64,000 nt of DNA. It comes from Hydrolagus colliei. Taxonomy: Eukaryota. Of this stretch, positions 31,262 to 41,977 are shown one piece after another. Positions within the stretch are counted from its first letter, which is position 1. Each line of letters begins with the position of its first letter. The notes beneath the pieces are model-generated. The model was given only the letters and a program-made list of their open reading frames with translations, was not told the DNA's origin and did no database searches. Both the position numbers and the translations under genes were made by a program. The DNA lies in contig JAYJKW010000399.1 of NCBI GenBank assembly GCA_035084275.1, positions 1,612,001-1,676,000 of the forward strand. The letters are read 5' to 3'.

Positions 31262-31310
31262 ATGCTACTTTACAGCTCCGTATCCATCCTCAAGCTGTTT
31301 CTCCTGTTCT
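31262..31310 (+). CDS. Gene B signal-peptide exon (MLLYSSVSILKLFLLF)
   Basis: ATG, 16 mostly hydrophobic codons plus 1 nt, gtgagt donor. Phase 1 matches the next exon. Confidence 0.7.
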
Positions 31311-34300
31311 GTGAGTATTGTTAATAACCCAAACAATGACTTCATCCCACAGCATCATGTTTGACCGTCAACTGTCGTTCACCCTCACATCGCTGCTGTA
31401 GTCCACTCTGCCTGTCTCTATCTGCACGTAGACCACCCCATCATAGGCGGGATGGCCGTCAGTGTCTCTGCGCCCACCATCTGAAACTCCATCCCAAAGT
31501 TGCTGAAACTCGCCCACTCGCTTCTGCCACCCTATTAGCCCTACATTCTCTTCTTAACACCTGTCCTGAAATCAACCACCAGCTCTGGTGCAAATCTCCA
31601 GCTATCCACCGCGGGACGTCCTGTTGTTGTGAAATATACTACGTAAAGTAATTTTGTCTTATTATCCCGGAAAGAATGAAGGATAAGATGCGTGGGGGAT
31701 AAACGACGGAGACAGATGAGCGAGGGGGAGAGTAGATAGCAGAGAAGAGGAAATAGATCGGAGATCGCTAGCGATTAGATATCAGATTGGAGACAGCATA
31801 GAGGGAGGCAAAAGAGGAGTGAGAGGAGAGAGAAATGCACATAGAGGGAGAGAGAGAGTAGAACAGGAGAGAAATAGGGGAGAGAGGGAGAGAATAGAGA
31901 TAAGAGAAGATATACTAGAAAGGATGGAGGAGAAACCAGAGGACAGAGGAGATGATAGAGGACTTTCTGATTCTGAGCTGTCACCAAACATATCATCTCC
32001 GAGACTTGTGCGGGAGAATATTGCAGATCATCTCCCCGATAGTGTGAATTGCCGTATTAATGATTCTAGCTTTTTTATGTTGTTTTTTTTCCTTGTACAG
32101 GGATATTTCTGGAGAGAATAATGGTGCAGTCTGCGGGTCATGACATGAACTCACAGCCAGAAGCTGTTGTTGGAACATTAGCTCCTACGAGTGAGTCTTG
32201 GCGTCTCTTTACCTACATCTAGAGAGTGGGGAAATAAATCATCACATAATGTACAGGCCACGCTATTAAAGCTTATTAGATTGTCGCTCGTGGCACTTTA
32301 TTCTCCCATCGATGGCTGAGCTATCAGCTTCTACATTTCAAAACTCTGGAATATTCTATCTCTTTCCCTCCATATAGGCAGCTTTGGCTGTCTGCGTCAC
32401 ATTGACTCTTCAAATGCAATTTGATTTTCTTCTTGTAGCCGTGGCAGCTGTATGTCTAGGTTTAAAGAAGTTGTTTGGTGGGTTGAAAATGAGAGCTTGA
32501 TAGAAAATGTACGATATTGACTGGGTTCCTCAGAGCTGCCGCCAGGAAAGATTAGCTCTCAATTCGCGGAGCTGTGAGGCTATGACCTGTATCAATTTGC
32601 ACTGTTCAATATCTTTCTCTCTGTGTTTATGTATAAGAATATACGCACATAAGAAGTAGTAGTAGGCCATTCGGCCCTTTTAACCTGCCCCAACATTCAA
32701 TCATGGTTGATCTTCCAGTCTAACTCCACCTGATCCCCACCACTTATTCCATTTATCAATGAGAAATCCATCTATCTCAGTCTTGAGTGTGTTCAAGCAC
32801 TGAGCATCAACGGTCCTTTTTGGTAAAGAATTCCATACATTCACTGAACTCTGAGTGAAGAAATTTTTTCTCAACTCAGTGCGGAAGGTCTGACACACTA
32901 CTACGTAACTTGCCATGAAACATTCTAGAGCTGCCAATTACGCTATTAAAATGATATTGTCTGTGTGTATCTGTGGATTTGCCAATAACCGAATACCTGA
33001 CTTGAAAATATAATGTATACCATAACGGAAAAGTCTTGCTAGGACACATGCTAAGGTCACATTTGGCTTCTAGGATCTCATATGTTTCATCAGCTATATT
33101 TCAGTTGACAATATTTATCTGAAAAATAGTTTATTCTGTAAGCTAATATTTTTTAAATATCACATACCGTTCTAGAGCGATATATCTTATTAATATGTTG
33201 TGCAGCAAATTAAAAATCATCGGTGTATAATTACGTGGGATCTCCTATCGTACTAATAATTGAATTTAAAACATAGTAGTTCAATAAATAGTATAACATT
33301 TATTGTGAGTTATAATCATGTCAAGTATATAGTACAATTTCTTAAAACGTAATAAAATATTAATCCACCAATTTGATTCAGTGCTTCCGTGTCTTCTAGA
33401 TATCTTGAAGAGCTATAACTGTATGCTATAAATTTTACTGCCTGCATTATTTTCGTGAAAAGAGTTATAGCCAATGGCGCACATCAGTGGTCTGACACAA
33501 ACAGTCATGGATTGACGTGACCAATTTTATATTTGTTTTTCCCTTAAATATAATATAACGTATAATAATATGAAGTACAAGTACTTAGTATAGTATAATT
33601 TATAATAAGGAACTATAATTTATGATCATATGTCAAATAAATTAATATACAATATAACAATCACTTACGAAGCTTGATAATCGAATATAACATATGAAGA
33701 AACGTACAGTATCGTATTATATTGCAATGTATTGCAATACAAAATCTTATAACATAAAGTTTAATGACACTGCAATCTTTGTTCCATGGTATATTATTTG
33801 GTTGCAAACGTAAGTGAAACGTGTGCAGCTCACCAAGGAATAAACTGCGTCTGTTATTGAGGCACCCAGAATGTGGACTGTATATTGCAATCAGTCACTG
33901 CTACCATTATAGTCATTATTATCGTTGTTGTACAGTTTATGACGCAGACACTCTCCCAATGAGTAAGGCACAGGTGCAGTTTATTGTATACTGGTTGACT
34001 TGAAGTCAAAGAAGAGACAGACTATCAATATCTTGTGTGATATGCTACAGGGAGAATGAGACTGGCGAATGGAGGCAGCACGTGTGCTGGGAGAGTAGAG
34101 ATTCGCCACGATGGACGGTGGGGGACAGTGTTTAACTCTGGCTGGGATATAAAGGACGCGGCTGTGGTGTGTAAGGAGCTGGGCTGTGGGGAGGCAATGT
34201 CAATACCAGGAGGAGCTCACTTTGGGAAAGGATTAGGTCTCGTTGTGACGTTTGATGTTCAGTGCAGAGGCAATGAGTCTACTCTGAGGGAATGTCCCTC

Positions 34301-40300: not shown

Positions 40301-41977
40301 TGATTTGATCGCAGAGGGAAAAAAAAACTGTTCACATACAGGCGCCTAGTCAGCCATGTAACTTAGTCCCACAGAACGCGGTCGATTGTTCATGATCTTC
40401 TGTCAGGCTAGAGGCCATTGTTCTCTTAACCTTTCGCTTGCGCTGCCACTCCCTGAAGATCTTCGGCTATCCGTTTGTGTATGTATGTGAGTGTTTGAAT
40501 GAGTGTCTACAAATGTGTTTGTCTGTTTGCATATCTGATTGTGTGTCTGTCCATGTGTCTAACTGTGTATCTGATCATGTGTCTCCATGTGTGTCTGACC
40601 GTCTGAATGAATTTTACCCACTTCAAGTGTTCTGCCCTTCAGGTGAGATGTGAAAACGAGTGTCCGTCTGGCTCTTTTGTTTAACATTAGACATCTTGAG
40701 TCACTGTTCACCAAGGCAATATAATTTTTATATGTGTCCACTAAATGAATAAAATATGTCATTCACCTTGCCATTCTGCGGCTCACTGTTGTGCCCAAAT
40801 TATATGATTTGTGTCACTAACAATACGAACAATAACTGCACTAAACGGCGTACCCTATGACACTCTTTGGGATGTCTCGACGAAATGACAACTTAGTTAA
40901 ATTCAGTGCCAAAATTGCAAGTATGCTATGATTTGTCAAATGATTATTATTGTCATTTTCATCGGTATTTACAGAATGTACTTACTTATAAGATTAACAA
41001 TGATATTGAATATCGTTGAGTTTCACTGTTATATGCTAGTACTATACATTGTTTGTTTTTGTTTCAGATGCTTCAGTGAGAATCGTACCAAGCTTGGTGC
41101 CTCCAGTGGTGAGTAGAGACAGAATCTTTGCTTTACGTTGGTTCAGGCCCAGTATGAGCTTAGATGCAGCTCAGCTCAGCCATACTGTAAGCCTCAGTCG
41201 GCTCCACGCTCAGCAGAATTCACGTCCAATGTCACCATCAATTAAATATTGCGCGAGCCAAGCATGTGCCTTGTTTCAGGCTGGCACAGCTCAGCTCAGA
41301 CACTGGCTCAGTCAAACTCAGCCAGCAGCACTATTGCCTCAGGCAGAAGAGAGTTTTGGGGGGAGATGGAATGTGTTTGTGTGACGTAGCTGTGCATAAT
41401 TTGGCTGCTGCGTTGGGTTCCCAAGTTCCAACAGCATCTGGTGAACACTTTACGGCACTGCCAGCAGTTCGCACGACCTCAAATGTCTGCGCGTGTACGT
41501 GTGTGATGCTTGCTGTGTGTATAGACCCAGAGTGCAGGAAGTGTAGGGATATCAACAACTTCGATTGATATAACGCACTCCACGTCGGACGGCGTCTAAG
41601 AGCGCTTCATAGTAGCACGTTGAACGATGGAATGGTCGTAGAGGTGGTTCTTCATAATGTACTTGCAGGAGGCAAAATAAAGCGACAGAGATATGGTATT
41701 TCAAATGGTGGAGGTTCAAGCCCAAATGCCCATATACACAAAAACGCACAAATTGCTCACACACATGCTGGTGCTTTGGCTTGGCATCCCAACATGGGTG
41801 AGGGTGGGCTTTGGCATTTCCCACTGAAACCCTAAGCAAATGGGCTGACGGACGTCGTTTTTGCAGGACTCCGATGTCACCTACGCCAGTCTGACGTTAG
41901 GAAACCGGATTGAGAATCGCTACAAAACCGTTCCTGACGATGGTGCAGTGTACGCCGCAGTCAGGGTGCAGCTGTGA
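31262..41977 (+). CDS. Gene B: complete SP-SRCR-Ig-Ig-TM-3xITIM receptor, 446 aa. Exons 31262-31310, 32101-32190, 34051-34359, 35755-36039, 37679-37963, 38388-38486, 39048-39075, 40239-40282, 41068-41108, 41867-41977
   Basis: The ten exons sum to 1341 nt (447 codons including TGA) with no internal stop. All nine introns are GT-AG with compatible phases. The two 5' exons are the least certain because they rest on splice signals, phase and hydrophobicity only. Confidence 0.85.
32101..32190 (+). CDS. Gene B exon 2, end of signal peptide and linker (W-IFLERIMVQSAGHDMNSQPEAVVGTLAPT)
   Basis: Long polypyrimidine tract plus acag acceptor, gtgagt donor, 90 nt open, phase 1-1. Confidence 0.7.
32635..32890 (-). 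mobile_element. CR1 3'-end fragment in gene B intron 2
   Basis: Minus-strand RTELRKNFFTQ...WNSLP motif and CR1 3' UTR. Confidence 0.8.
34051..34359 (+). CDS. Gene B SRCR (scavenger receptor cysteine-rich, group-B-like) domain exon
   Basis: RLANGGSTCAGRVEIRHDGRWGTV...W...DAAVVCKELGCG...VQCRGNESTLREC...AAVICS. Single 309-nt phase 1-1 exon, ctacag/gtaagt. Confidence 0.93.
34530..34985 (+). mobile_element. L2 3' fragment in the gene B SRCR-Ig intron
   Basis: HRSPITPVLGRLHWLPIPLRIDFKII...WNSLP...LKTFLF plus L2 tail. Confidence 0.85.
35755..36039 (+). CDS. Gene B Ig exon 1 (GSLQKPTINL...SC...YWCKY...SKRVDVSLL)
   Basis: 285 nt, phase 1-1, ttccag/gtacga, canonical Cys pair. Confidence 0.9.
37679..37963 (+). 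CDS. Gene B Ig exon 2 (DPMQKPNISM...SC...YWCQY...SERVRITVL)
   Basis: 285 nt, phase 1-1, ttccag/gtatgt. Closest to gene A Ig4. Confidence 0.9.
38388..38486 (+). CDS. Gene B transmembrane exon (GNWIWIQNPGLAGGIVTVIVIAVIFLAIRLYRR)
   Basis: 99 nt, phase 1-1. Uncharged hydrophobic helix followed by a basic stop-transfer motif. Confidence 0.88.
39048..39075 (+). CDS. Gene B cytoplasmic mini-exon (AKKYSPSGE)
   Basis: cctgcag acceptor, gtaaga donor, 28 nt, phase 1-2. Confidence 0.72.
40239..40282 (+). CDS. Gene B cytoplasmic exon (NLPERGGPQSINIT)
   Basis: 44 nt, ccccag/gtgagt. Paralog of 14267-14310. Confidence 0.8.
41068..41108 (+). CDS. Gene B cytoplasmic exon (Y-ASVRIVPSLVPPV), completes ITIM ITYASV
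   Basis: 41 nt, tttcag/gtgagt. Paralog of 15048-15088. Confidence 0.8.
41867..41977 (+). CDS. Gene B terminal exon DSDVTYASLTLGNRIENRYKTVPDDGAVYAAVRVQL*
   Basis: tttgcag acceptor, phase 0, ITIM VTYASL and ITIM-like AVYAAV, TGA stop. Confidence 0.88.
   Translation, partial: DSDVTYASLTLGNRIENRYKTVPDDGAVYAAVRVQL

What the first reader, a model, noticed from the sequence alone, without database searches (positions are those of the whole stretch)
31262..41977. Complete SRCR-Ig-Ig-TM-3xITIM hybrid inhibitory receptor gene
Seen in sequence: ten exons splice in frame into a 446-aa protein with a signal peptide, one SRCR domain, two LRC/LILR-like C2 Ig domains, an uncharged TM helix and ITYASV, VTYASL and AVYAAV motifs. 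Established: group-B SRCR membrane proteins of lymphocytes and macrophages (CD5, CD6, CD163, WC1, SCART) have SRCR-only ectodomains, and LILR/KIR/LITR-type ITIM receptors have Ig-only ectodomains. Inference: exon shuffling (all ectodomain exons are phase 1-1) put a scavenger module on an LRC-like inhibitory backbone. I know of no functionally characterised receptor with this architecture, but I cannot rule out that automated annotations already list similar fish proteins.
Basis: partly seen in the sequence, partly recalled or inferred. Interest (0 to 1): 0.9.

Follow-up and report, generated by a model that had tools for sequence, protein, structure and literature searches.

The report
SRCR–Ig hybrid inhibitory receptor gene
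An apparently intact gene in a chimaera-like fish genome encodes a membrane receptor that joins a WC1-type scavenger domain to two LILR-like immunoglobulin domains and an inhibitory tail; it belongs to an unstudied gene family that automated annotations already list, so it is not a one-off.

Summary
Ten GT-AG exons (31262-41977, + strand) join in frame into a 446-aa type I membrane protein. It has a leader, one SRCR domain (Pfam E 3e-27), two Ig domains closest to PIR-B/LILR/KIR, an uncharged TM helix and a tyrosine-motif tail. Only two motifs (ITYASV, VTYASL) fit the ITIM consensus; AVYAAV does not.

Exon shuffling is supported: all ectodomain exons are phase 1-1. In domain trees the SRCR exon falls in a six-cysteine clade with the N-terminal 'a' domain of WC1 (SH-like 0.90, SH-aLRT 90.4).

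The architecture is not unique. Callorhinchus milii has many predicted relatives with the same leader, SRCR, Ig, TM and conserved tail, at 50-61% identity. One (V9KHJ3) is probably transcript-derived. SRCR+Ig membrane mosaics are also annotated in rays, sharks, bowfin, teleosts and a caecilian. Mouse FCRLS is a characterised Ig/SRCR chimera with a different layout.

I found no paper on this family and no transcript of this gene. An Ig-only paralog lies upstream, and an array of TCRα/δ-like V segments lies downstream.

Verdict: a real gene, a new variant of a known kind, of moderate interest.

The parts
31262..31310 (+). Exon 1: ATG and first part of the leader (MLLYSSVSILKLFLLF-W)
   Evidence: The donor is TCT|GTGAGT. 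The hydrophobic core is shown. The leader is homologous to C. milii leaders.
32101..32190 (+). Exon 2: second leader exon plus linker (IFLERIMVQSAG HDMNSQPEAVVGTLAPT). An alternative, ancestral-position donor after 32136 gives a 36-nt exon.
   Evidence: The C. milii homolog in L001 has a 36-nt exon 2 followed by gtgagt. The window has a weak donor at that position and a strong donor at 32190. Both choices are phase 1.
34051..34359 (+). Exon 3: one complete SRCR domain. It is group B and of the six-cysteine WC1 'a' type, lacking C2 and C7.
   Evidence: Pfam E 3.1e-27. PDB CD163 domain 7, E 3.7e-27. Cysteine pattern C.CCCC.C. Trees. dN/dS 0.61.
35755..36039 (+). Exon 4: Ig domain 1 (C2-type, LRC-like)
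37679..37963 (+). Exon 5: Ig domain 2 (C2-type, LRC-like)
38388..38486 (+). Exon 6: stalk, uncharged transmembrane helix (GLAGGIVTVIVIAVIFLAI) and basic stop-transfer sequence
   Evidence: The paralog and C. milii have a TM exon of the same 99-nt size.
39048..39075 (+). Exon 7: cytoplasmic segment, 28 nt (KKYSPSGE-R)
   Evidence: It is conserved as KQKSSSGER in C. milii.
40239..40282 (+). Exon 8: cytoplasmic segment, 44 nt. It ends inside the Tyr codon of ITIM 1 (…SINIT-Y).
   Evidence: The paralog has a 44-nt counterpart at 14267-14310.
41068..41108 (+). Exon 9: cytoplasmic segment, 41 nt. It completes ITIM 1 (ITYASV).
   Evidence: The paralog has a 41-nt counterpart at 15048-15088.
41867..41977 (+). 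Exon 10: ITIM 2 (VTYASL), the C-terminal ITIM-like AVYAAV, and the stop codon TGA
   Evidence: The paralog counterpart is at 15828-15932.
1168..15932 (+). Upstream tandem paralog, whose 5' end lies outside the window. It has four Ig exons (1168-1473, 3197-3502, 5591-5875, 7271-7561), a TM exon (8653-8751) and tail exons (14267-14310, 15048-15088, 15828-15932) encoding ITYATV, ITYANL and MVYATV. No SRCR exon is present within the window. No equivalent of exon 7 was found. A LINE lies in the long intron.

Best explanation
This is an intact member of a tandemly duplicated multigene family known so far only from holocephalans (Callorhinchus milii and the species of this window). The family resembles the paired receptor families.

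The encoded protein is a type I membrane receptor. Its membrane-distal module is a single SRCR domain of the six-cysteine WC1 'a' type. Below it are two LILR/PIR/KIR-like C2 Ig domains, an uncharged TM helix, and a tail with two canonical ITIMs 19 residues apart plus a conserved C-terminal YAxV.

Shown: the gene structure; the domain identities; the SRCR subtype; conservation of the tail; and family membership.

Inferred: the ectodomain engages a ligand, Src-family kinases then phosphorylate the ITIM tyrosines, these recruit SHP-1/SHP-2 (or SHIP), and an activating receptor on the same leukocyte is damped.

The SRCR domain lacks five of the six side chains of the canonical surface-exposed SRCR cation sites. 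If it binds ligand, it probably does not use the DMBT1/MARCO-type Ca2+ bridge.

Because every ectodomain exon is phase 1-1, isoforms with or without the SRCR exon are possible, as annotated in C. milii.

The architecture most likely arose in the holocephalan lineage. An 'a'-type exon from a WC1/SCART-like SRCR gene would have been shuffled onto an Ig-TM-ITIM gene.
For: Gene model.

Domains.

Family:
- C. milii proteins P0012, P0003, P0072, P0173, P0202 and P0308 share the leader (…IFLE…), six-Cys SRCR, Ig, TM and tail, at 50-61% identity.
- Tail alignment: [IV]TYA[ST]V, then 19 aa, then [IV][TI]YA[NS]L, then 23 aa, then x[VI]YA[AT]VRV. This holds in both window genes and in C. milii.
- The annotated C. 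milii gene in L001 has the same structure of one exon per domain.
- P0308 is UniProt V9KHJ3. That series comes, as I recall, from the Trinity transcripts deposited by the elephant shark genome project (for the deposit).

SRCR subtype:
- Cysteine pattern C.CCCC.C.
- A clade of 43 domains, all six-Cys, is nested as holocephalan (26, aLRT 96.8) inside chondrichthyan (34, 93.5) inside a set that includes gar and mammalian WC1 S1 domains (43, 90.4; FastTree 0.90).
- Herzig 2010 calls the N-terminal 'a' domain WC1-diagnostic and describes loss of C2/C7.

Ig domains: all Ig domains of the window genes and of C. milii form one clade (0.974), with the window domains nested among C. milii subclades.

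Coding constraint: dN/dS 0.34-0.61.

Paired-family trait: C. milii P0069/P0107 have an Arg in the TM and a short tail without ITIM.

Cation sites: Reichhardt 2020 gives D1019/D1020/E1086 and D1020/D1058/D1059/N1081. The window has N, S, N, F, D, L at the aligned columns.
Against: - There is no transcript or protein evidence for this particular gene. Neither the full protein nor a piece spanning leader, SRCR and Ig1 found any hit of 90% identity or more.
- The species is unidentified.
- The exon 2 donor is ambiguous.
- The third motif is not an ITIM.
- The 19-residue spacing of the two ITIMs is shorter than the ~25-30 I recall for KIR/LILR. Binding to tandem SH2 domains is untested.
- Tyr-x-x-hydrophobic motifs can also act as endocytosis signals.
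- The ligand and the expressing cell type are unknown.
- The structure prediction of the SRCR exon failed (pLDDT 39), so there is no structural check of the three-disulfide fold.
- dN/dS of 0.6 shows only modest constraint.
Confidence: 0.7

Rival explanations
1. The main product is an Ig-only inhibitory receptor. The SRCR exon would be an optional or rarely used cassette, skipped in most transcripts.
For: Exon 3 is phase 1-1, so skipping it keeps the frame. C. milii has annotated isoform pairs that differ by one SRCR exon: P0107 versus P0069, and P0004 versus P0003. Ig-only family members exist (P0068, P0082, P0001). The upstream paralog shows no SRCR exon within the window.
Against: The SRCR exon has a good acceptor and a consensus CAG|GTAAGT donor. 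It keeps all six family cysteines and has dN/dS below 1. Many C. milii models, and probably a transcript (V9KHJ3), include the SRCR.
Confidence: 0.15
2. It is an unexpressed or decaying copy in a birth-and-death family. The reading frame would be intact only because the duplication is not old enough for it to have broken.
For: No hit of 90% identity or more was found in a 5.8-billion-protein collection that includes transcript assemblies. The ancestral exon 2 donor is degraded. In the neighbouring paralog no exon 7 equivalent could be found, and a LINE sits in that intron. Four of the seven neighbouring V segments carry stops.
Against: All ten exons are open and have canonical splice sites. 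dS against paralogs is 0.4-0.6, so the copy is old, yet it has no stop or frameshift. The ITIM tyrosines and their context are conserved. The missing database hit is more simply explained if the source species has no annotation or RNA data in the collection.
Confidence: 0.1
3. It works mainly as an endocytic or scavenging receptor, or has dual or activating signalling, rather than as a classical inhibitory receptor. In this reading the YxxV/L motifs serve AP-2 sorting or recruit other SH2 proteins.
For: SRCR membrane proteins such as CD163 and the class A scavenger receptors are endocytic (general knowledge). All three tail tyrosines also fit YxxΦ. WC1, the source of the SRCR subtype, is an activating co-receptor and pathogen binder. 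ITIM-bearing fish LITRs can have unexpected stimulatory functions (titles).
Against: Two motifs fit the strict ITIM consensus. They are conserved with their -2 residues across paralogs and species, which a bare YxxΦ signal would not need. The family also contains a member with a charged TM and a short tail (P0069), the usual activating partner of inhibitory receptors.
Confidence: 0.12
4. The model wrongly fuses two genes: a short secreted leader-SRCR gene and a downstream Ig-TM-ITIM gene.
For: Some long SRCR/Ig mosaics in other species, with interleaved S and I domains, could be annotation fusions. SRCR-only short proteins exist in C. milii (P0118, P0305).
Against: Exon 3 leaves its reading frame open at a consensus splice donor (CAG|GTAAGT). 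No leader exon was found between 34359 and 35755: exon 1 and exon 2 probes gave only short chance-level matches outside the gene. Ig exon 1 starts in phase 1 and cannot start a protein. The same leader-SRCR-Ig order appears in independent C. milii models and in V9KHJ3.
Confidence: 0.03

Closest known systems
Callorhinchus milii predicted SRCR-Ig-TM-ITIM proteins (LOC103172721 / XP_042201735, LOC103191288 / XP_007910464, XP_007883112, UniProt V9KHJ3; annotated 'uncharacterized', 'DMBT1-like', 'M130-like', 'alpha-1B-glycoprotein-like')
   Same: They share the leader motif, six-Cys SRCR, the Ig type, the 99-nt TM exon and a tail with VTYATV / IIYANL / PVYATVRV. They have one exon per domain and sit in the same SRCR and Ig clades.
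   Different: Identity is only 50-61%. Domain numbers vary (1-2 SRCR, 1-4 Ig). None is identical, so the window gene is a separate member, probably from another holocephalan species. None has been studied functionally as far as I could find.
WC1 / SCART (CD163c-alpha) family of group B SRCR co-receptors of gamma-delta T cells
   Same: The SRCR domain falls in the clade of the N-terminal 'a' (a1) domain of WC1. It has the same loss of the C2-C7 disulfide and the same membrane-distal position. It is encoded by a single exon.
   Different: WC1 has 6 or 11 SRCR domains and no Ig domains. Its tail has different, activating/co-receptor tyrosine motifs. Here there is one SRCR, two Ig domains and ITIMs.
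LRC-type paired Ig receptors (LILR, PIR, KIR; by analogy chicken CHIR and catfish LITR)
   Same: The Ig sequences are closest to PIR-B, LILRB and KIR. Exons are phase 1. The leader is split, and the second leader exon is 36 nt in the C. milii homolog; I recall that 36 bp is the LRC pattern, but I could not confirm this in the library. ITIM forms with an uncharged TM coexist with a charged-TM, short-tail form. The genes are tandemly duplicated.
   Different: There is an N-terminal SRCR domain. There is no evidence of LRC synteny: the neighbours are a paralog and TCR-like V segments. Similarity to FcεRIα and to 'FCRL5-like'/'IGSF1-like' shark proteins is nearly as good, so the Ig type belongs to the wider FcR/LRC superfamily.
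[quoted passage not shown]
   Same: It is the characterised precedent for fusing FcR/LRC-superfamily Ig domains with a group B SRCR domain by recombination between neighbouring genes.
   Different: FCRLS is soluble, has no TM and no ITIM, and its SRCR is C-terminal and CD5L-like. It is an independent event in mammals.
Annotated SRCR+Ig transmembrane mosaics of elasmobranchs, bowfin, teleosts and a caecilian (for example Narcine XP_069783103, Pristis LOC127566442/3, Scyliorhinus LOC119958387, Amia XP_066566105, Geotrypetes XP_033817435)
   Same: They have SRCR plus related Ig domains (profile E down to 1e-210) plus a TM, and they are uncharacterised.
   Different: They are much larger, with up to 25 Ig and 11 SRCR domains. 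Most of their SRCR domains are eight-Cys types outside the 'a' clade. Their tails are short or acidic and Tyr-rich, without the holocephalan ITIM tail. Some may be fused gene models.
Chicken chromosome 16 SRCR receptor genes reported to carry ITIMs
   Same: An SRCR ectodomain is combined with ITIM signalling (citing Miller et al. 2014).
   Different: No Ig domains are reported in the passage I read. I did not examine the sequences.

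Membership tests
Group B SRCR superfamily | An SRCR domain of ~100-110 aa, encoded by a single exon, with the C1 and C4 cysteines | tested here: met
   Pfam PF00530 E 3.1e-27 over profile positions 2-100 of 100. One 309-nt exon. C1, C3, C4, C5, C6 and C8 are present. The closest solved structures are CD163, DMBT1, CD5L and CD6.
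WC1/SCART (CD163 family) | N-terminal 'a'-type SRCR domain | tested here: met
   The window SRCR lies in a 43-domain six-Cys clade that contains the S1 domains of Bos, Capra, Ovis, Canis and Otolemur WC1. Support is FastTree 0.90 and SH-aLRT 90.4. Definition from Herzig 2010.
WC1/SCART (CD163 family) | An ectodomain made only of multiple tandem SRCR domains in a characteristic order (a-b-c-d-e…) | tested here: not met
   There is one SRCR exon in the gene and in the whole 64-kb window. It is followed by two Ig exons.
WC1/SCART (CD163 family) | WC1/CD163-type cytoplasmic tail | tested here: not met
   The region search with residues 150-446 (Ig domains, TM and tail) returned only C. milii SRCR-Ig and Ig-only family proteins, and no WC1/CD163 protein. 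No direct tail-to-tail comparison with WC1 was made.
LRC-type Ig receptors (LILR/PIR/KIR-like) | C2 Ig domains with LILR/KIR-type sequence | tested here: met
   phmmer against PDB: PIR-B 1.1e-9, LILRB2 6.5e-9, LILRB1 3e-7, KIR3DL1 3e-6. FcεRIα (2e-4) and OSCAR (4e-4) come next.
LRC-type Ig receptors (LILR/PIR/KIR-like) | Split signal peptide with a 36-bp second exon (feature recalled from memory, not confirmed in the library) | tested here: inconclusive
   The C. milii homolog has exactly 36 nt followed by gtgagt. The window keeps the 36-nt frame but has a weak donor there and a strong donor that gives 90 nt. Literature look-ups for the rule found nothing.
LRC-type Ig receptors (LILR/PIR/KIR-like) | Location in the leukocyte receptor complex (synteny with LRC framing genes) | tested here: not met
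   Within the 64 kb, the neighbours are a paralog, LINE fragments and seven TCR-like V segments. No framing gene was seen. Wider synteny cannot be tested here.
LRC-type Ig receptors (LILR/PIR/KIR-like) | Paired inhibitory (ITIM, neutral TM) and activating (charged TM, short tail) members | tested here: met
   Window gene: neutral TM plus ITIMs. C. milii P0069/P0107: TM …NVARLIVVITLPLVIIFLLVI… with Arg, and a short tail without ITIM. Adaptor pairing was not tested.
ITIM-bearing inhibitory receptors | At least one cytoplasmic (I/V/L/S)xYxx(L/V/I) motif | tested here: met
   ITYASV and VTYASL fit. AVYAAV does not.
ITIM-bearing inhibitory receptors | Phosphotyrosine-dependent recruitment of SHP-1/SHP-2/SHIP and inhibition of ITAM signalling | not testable with these tools
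   This needs biochemistry and cell assays.
FCRLS | A soluble protein with FCRL Ig domains followed by a C-terminal CD5L-like SRCR domain, and a 21-bp second leader exon | tested here: not met
   Here the SRCR is N-terminal, a TM and ITIMs are present, and the second leader exon is 36 or 90 nt. FCRLS description.
Canonical cation-dependent SRCR ligand binders (DMBT1/MARCO type) | Acidic cluster that coordinates cation sites 2 and 3 (D1019, D1020, E1086; D1058, D1059, N1081 in DMBT1 SRCR8) | tested here: not met
   The aligned columns 26, 27, 93, 65, 66 and 88 read N, S, N, F, D, L in the window. The whole 'a' clade departs from the eight-Cys consensus at columns 27, 65 and 93, where the eight-Cys consensus has D, D and E. 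Site definition.

The most novel reading that the evidence does not exclude
Holocephalans would have evolved a lineage-specific paired-receptor system. In it, the pathogen-binding membrane-distal 'a' SRCR domain of the WC1/SCART gamma-delta T-cell co-receptors has been moved onto LILR-like Ig stalks with inhibitory (ITIM) or activating (charged TM) signalling. The genes would be embedded in or next to the TCR alpha/delta V-gene array.

This would make them T-cell-expressed hybrid pattern-recognition and checkpoint receptors. They would be a functional inverse of WC1 and a missing link between the SRCR co-receptor world and the LRC world.
Probability: 0.15. Interest if true: 0.75.

Novelty: new variant of a known kind. 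Interest (0 to 1): 0.5.

Why it matters
Inhibitory Ig-superfamily receptors (LILR, KIR, PIR, CHIR, LITR) and SRCR co-receptors (WC1, SCART, CD5, CD6, CD163) are normally treated as separate receptor worlds. FCRLS has been called a unique Ig/SRCR chimera.

This gene and its relatives show that exon shuffling joined the two modules repeatedly in non-mammalian jawed vertebrates. In the chimaera lineage the fusion used the WC1 'a' domain and an ITIM tail.

This gives comparative immunologists three things:
- a defined, testable family for asking what an SRCR domain adds to an inhibitory receptor, for example microbial or self ligand recognition coupled to inhibition;
- a way to date the WC1 'a' domain to the gnathostome ancestor;
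- a lead on a possible linkage between such receptors and the TCR alpha/delta V locus.

The result is only at the level of annotation. Without expression and ligand data, its importance remains potential.

Tried and rejected
1. Transcript evidence for this gene. The full protein and a 229-aa piece spanning leader, SRCR and Ig1 were searched against 5.8 billion proteins. The best identity was 57-61%, all from C. milii. So there is no direct support and no identification of the species.

2. Exact look-ups of P0012 and P0308 for their contigs. Neither is on record.

3. Species identification by comparing the window with a C. milii locus. They share only old repeat families at 70-80% identity, which is not decisive.

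4. Structure prediction.
- The SRCR exon with an 11-row alignment gave pLDDT 39, which is unusable, so no fold search was run.

5. IQ-TREE with 1000 ultrafast bootstraps on about 160 domains timed out. It was replaced by -fast with SH-aLRT.

6. Literature. Nine searches combined SRCR, ITIM, Ig, cartilaginous fish, Callorhinchus, LITR and LRC. None found a paper describing an SRCR-Ig-ITIM receptor family. The '36-bp second leader exon' rule for LRC genes could not be confirmed in the library.

7. PDB search with a V segment to decide between TCR and Ig. The results were swamped by antibodies and were not decisive.

8. Search for an exon 7 equivalent in the upstream paralog. No convincing candidate was found.

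9. Rejected: the idea that the SRCR is a group A domain or a degenerate domain. The six cysteines are C1, C3, C4, C5, C6 and C8, a recognised group B variant.

10. Rejected: that the elasmobranch and teleost mosaics are simple orthologs. Their SRCR subtypes and tails differ.

Full report
**1. Observation**

The ten exons are 31262-31310, 32101-32190, 34051-34359, 35755-36039, 37679-37963, 38388-38486, 39048-39075, 40239-40282, 41068-41108 and 41867-41977. All are bounded by AG and GT, and most donors are GTGAGT or GTAAGT. Together they give 1341 nt, which is 446 codons plus TGA. Exons 2-6 are all phase 1-1.

Pfam finds one full-length SRCR domain (residues 53-149, E 3.1e-27) and two Ig domains. 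The only strong hydrophobic stretch outside the leader is 349-367. It is uncharged and is followed by RLYRRAKK. The tail contains ITYASV, VTYASL and AVYAAV. The description is therefore correct, with two refinements:
- AVYAAV has Ala at position -2 and is not a consensus ITIM.
- The donor of exon 2 is ambiguous (section 3).

**2. Surroundings**

A tblastn search of the model and of its relatives against the window found only one SRCR exon in the 64 kb.

An upstream paralog lies on the same strand. It has four Ig exons (1168-1473, 3197-3502, 5591-5875, 7271-7561), a 99-nt TM exon (8653-8751) and tail exons of the same sizes as in the gene under study: 44, 41 and 105 nt at 14267-14310, 15048-15088 and 15828-15932. 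These encode ITYATV, ITYANL and MVYATV. Its 5' end is outside the window, so I cannot say whether it has an SRCR exon. I could not find its exon 7 equivalent, and a LINE sits in that intron.

Downstream, from 45.3 to 59.9 kb on the + strand, there are seven V-set segments. They end in YFCAAG, YYCALS, YFCAVS, YVCALR and YFCATE. Six have recognisable 23-bp-spacer recombination signals, and four have internal stops. This looks like part of a TCR alpha/delta V array.

**3. Relatives and the gene model**

The closest proteins in a 5.8-billion-protein collection are all from the elephant shark, Callorhinchus milii, at 50-61% identity. They have the same parts in the same order:
- P0202: leader, SRCR, Ig.
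- P0012: SRCR-SRCR-Ig-Ig-TM-tail.
- P0003: two SRCR and four Ig.
- P0072: SRCR-Ig-TM-tail.
- P0308 (UniProt V9KHJ3): leader, SRCR, four Ig, TM, tail.

The tails align residue for residue as [IV]TYA[ST]V, 19 aa, [IV][TI]YA[NS]L, 23 aa, x[VI]YA[AT]VRV.

The annotated C. milii gene I fetched (L001) has one exon per domain. Its second leader exon is exactly 36 nt and is followed by gtgagt. The window keeps that 36-nt frame, but the donor there is weak (GCGG|gtcatg). Both are in frame, giving 428 or 446 aa.

The conserved leader, the shared exon sizes and phases, and the recurrence of leader-SRCR-Ig in independent models argue that the SRCR exon belongs to this gene. One of those models, V9KHJ3, belongs to a series I recall as deriving from the Trinity transcripts deposited by the genome project; one search confirms the deposit.

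There is no direct transcript evidence for the window's own gene: no hit reached 90% identity. That absence, together with dS of about 0.5 to the nearest C. milii exons, suggests another holocephalan species. I could not identify it.

**4. What kind of SRCR**

The domain has cysteines C1, C3, C4, C5, C6 and C8 and lacks the C2-C7 pair.

I extracted 617 SRCR domains from all proteins fetched and built two trees, one with FastTree and one with IQ-TREE -fast plus SH-aLRT. In both, the window domain lies in a clade of 43 domains, every one with the same six-Cys pattern. The clade is nested like the species tree:
- 26 holocephalan domains (aLRT 96.8);
- 34 after adding the first domains of shark and skate SRCR-only proteins (93.5);
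- 43 after adding gar and the first domain of mammalian WC1 (90.4; FastTree 0.90).

Herzig et al. describe the N-terminal 'a' domain as diagnostic of WC1, and loss of C2/C7 as a recognised group B variant. The a1 domain is the most membrane-distal WC1 domain and is one of the domains that bind Leptospira.

Within this clade, only the holocephalan members are joined to Ig domains.

The six side chains that form the surface-exposed cation sites of DMBT1 SRCR8 are D1019, D1020, E1086, D1058, D1059 and N1081. At the aligned columns the window has N, S, N, F, D and L, and the 'a' clade as a whole departs from the eight-Cys consensus there. The usual Ca2+-bridge mode of ligand binding is therefore unlikely.

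**5. What kind of Ig**

The two Ig domains are closest to PIR-B, LILRB2, LILRB1 and KIR3DL1 among solved structures (E 1e-9 to 1e-6). FcεRIα and OSCAR come next.

A profile built from Ig-only C. milii members found 837 proteins (E ≤ 1e-3) among 1.84 billion representatives. The nearest non-holocephalan ones are annotated 'IGSF1-like' or 'FCRL5-like' in sharks, rays and frogs.

In a tree of 858 distinct aligned Ig domain sequences (from 1101 domains found), all window and C. milii domains form one clade (0.974), and the window domains nest inside C. milii subclades. The family therefore diversified before the two lineages, or the two copies, split.

I call the Ig type 'LRC-like within the FcR/LRC superfamily'. 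Membership of the LRC proper is not shown, because no synteny was found.

**6. How widespread the architecture is**

Of the 141 new proteins among the best 150 profile hits, 36 combine SRCR domains with these Ig domains. The named examples are from Narcine, Pristis, Heptranchias, Scyliorhinus, Chiloscyllium/Hemiscyllium, Amia, Sphaeramia and the caecilian Geotrypetes. All are annotated 'uncharacterized' or 'DMBT1-like'. Teleost examples had already appeared.

They are large mosaics, mostly with eight-Cys SRCR types, and their tails lack the holocephalan ITIM pattern. Some may be fused gene models. Whether they and the holocephalan family share one origin is unresolved.

In mammals, FCRLS is a characterised Ig/SRCR-B chimera that the literature calls unique. 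It is soluble and its SRCR is C-terminal and CD5L-like. Chicken chromosome 16 SRCR genes are reported to carry ITIMs.

None of my nine literature searches found a description of an SRCR-Ig-ITIM family.

**7. Mechanism**

Shown:
- an intact type I membrane protein gene;
- a membrane-distal WC1-'a' SRCR, two LRC-like Ig domains and a neutral TM;
- two consensus ITIMs and a conserved C-terminal YAxV;
- family members with Arg in the TM and a short tail (P0069), SRCR-only members with a related TM and tail (P0100), and Ig-only members (P0068);
- dN/dS of 0.34-0.61, meaning constraint that is relaxed, as is usual for immune receptors.

Inferred: ligand engagement leads to ITIM phosphorylation, SHP-1/2 (or SHIP) recruitment, and damping of an activating receptor. 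Alternative splicing of the phase 1-1 exons could tune the ectodomain.

Rivals (SRCR exon mostly skipped; silent copy; endocytic or dual signalling; fused model) are scored in the rival explanations.

**8. Verdict**

The gene is real. It is a new variant of a known kind (an ITIM-bearing, LRC-like paired receptor carrying a WC1-type SRCR domain), and it belongs to a family that automated annotation already lists but that no paper I could find has characterised.

Interest is moderate at 0.5. It would be higher if expression on T cells or linkage to the TCR alpha/delta locus proves general.

The N run at 51647-51788 was left untouched.

Noticed in passing
window 45280-59911 (+): There are seven V-set gene segments, at 45280-45534, 48046-48309, 50935-51183, 52940-53224, 54842-55111, 57692-57901 and 59612-59911. 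They end in YFCAAG, YYCALS, YFCAVS, YVCALR and YFCATE. Six have 23-bp-spacer RSS-like signals, for example CACAGAG-23-ACAAAAACT at 53227. Four carry in-frame stops. This looks like a translocon-type TCR alpha/delta V array that starts 3.3 kb after the receptor gene's stop codon.
   Followed up: partly
window 10846-13625 (+), 20078-20437 (-): LINE ORFs (endonuclease and reverse transcriptase) lie inside the long TM-to-tail intron of the upstream paralog. A second RT fragment lies between the two receptor genes.
   Followed up: no
window 34435-34998, 7842-8261, 47295-47816: Copies of one interspersed repeat appear as ORFs with '…LHWLPI…' motifs. One sits in the SRCR-to-Ig1 intron. The same repeat families occur in the C. 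milii locus L001 at about 70-80% identity.
   Followed up: partly
window 1168-1473 and 3197-3502: The first two Ig exons of the upstream paralog are near-identical 306-nt duplicates, including their flanks. This indicates a recent internal exon duplication. They carry a 7-codon insertion relative to the other Ig exons.
   Followed up: no
window 51647-51788: A run of 142 N (an assembly gap or masked stretch) lies inside the V-segment array. It was left untouched.
   Followed up: no
C. milii protein P0066: A predicted SRCR-Ig-Ig protein continues into a PRY/SPRY (B30.2) domain and is annotated 'TRIM17-like'. This is a butyrophilin-like combination on the same ectodomain type. A newt 'CD5 antigen-like' protein (P0095) also pairs SRCR with SPRY. 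These may be real fusions or fused gene models.
   Followed up: no
C. milii proteins P0069/P0107 and locus L001: This family member has an Arg inside its TM helix and a short tail without ITIM, the hallmark of an activating partner. Its two annotated isoforms differ by inclusion of the first SRCR exon.
   Followed up: partly
C. milii protein P0100: An SRCR-only ectodomain (an 'a'-type domain plus a degenerate second SRCR) sits on a TM and tail closely resembling those of the Ig-only member P0068 (…ETYTNL…PIYANT). The tail backbone is therefore used with SRCR-only, SRCR+Ig and Ig-only ectodomains.
   Followed up: no
window 16117-16189 and 28971-29036: Simple repeats, (GTGG)n and (TC)n, lie in the intergenic stretch between the two receptor genes.
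   Followed up: no
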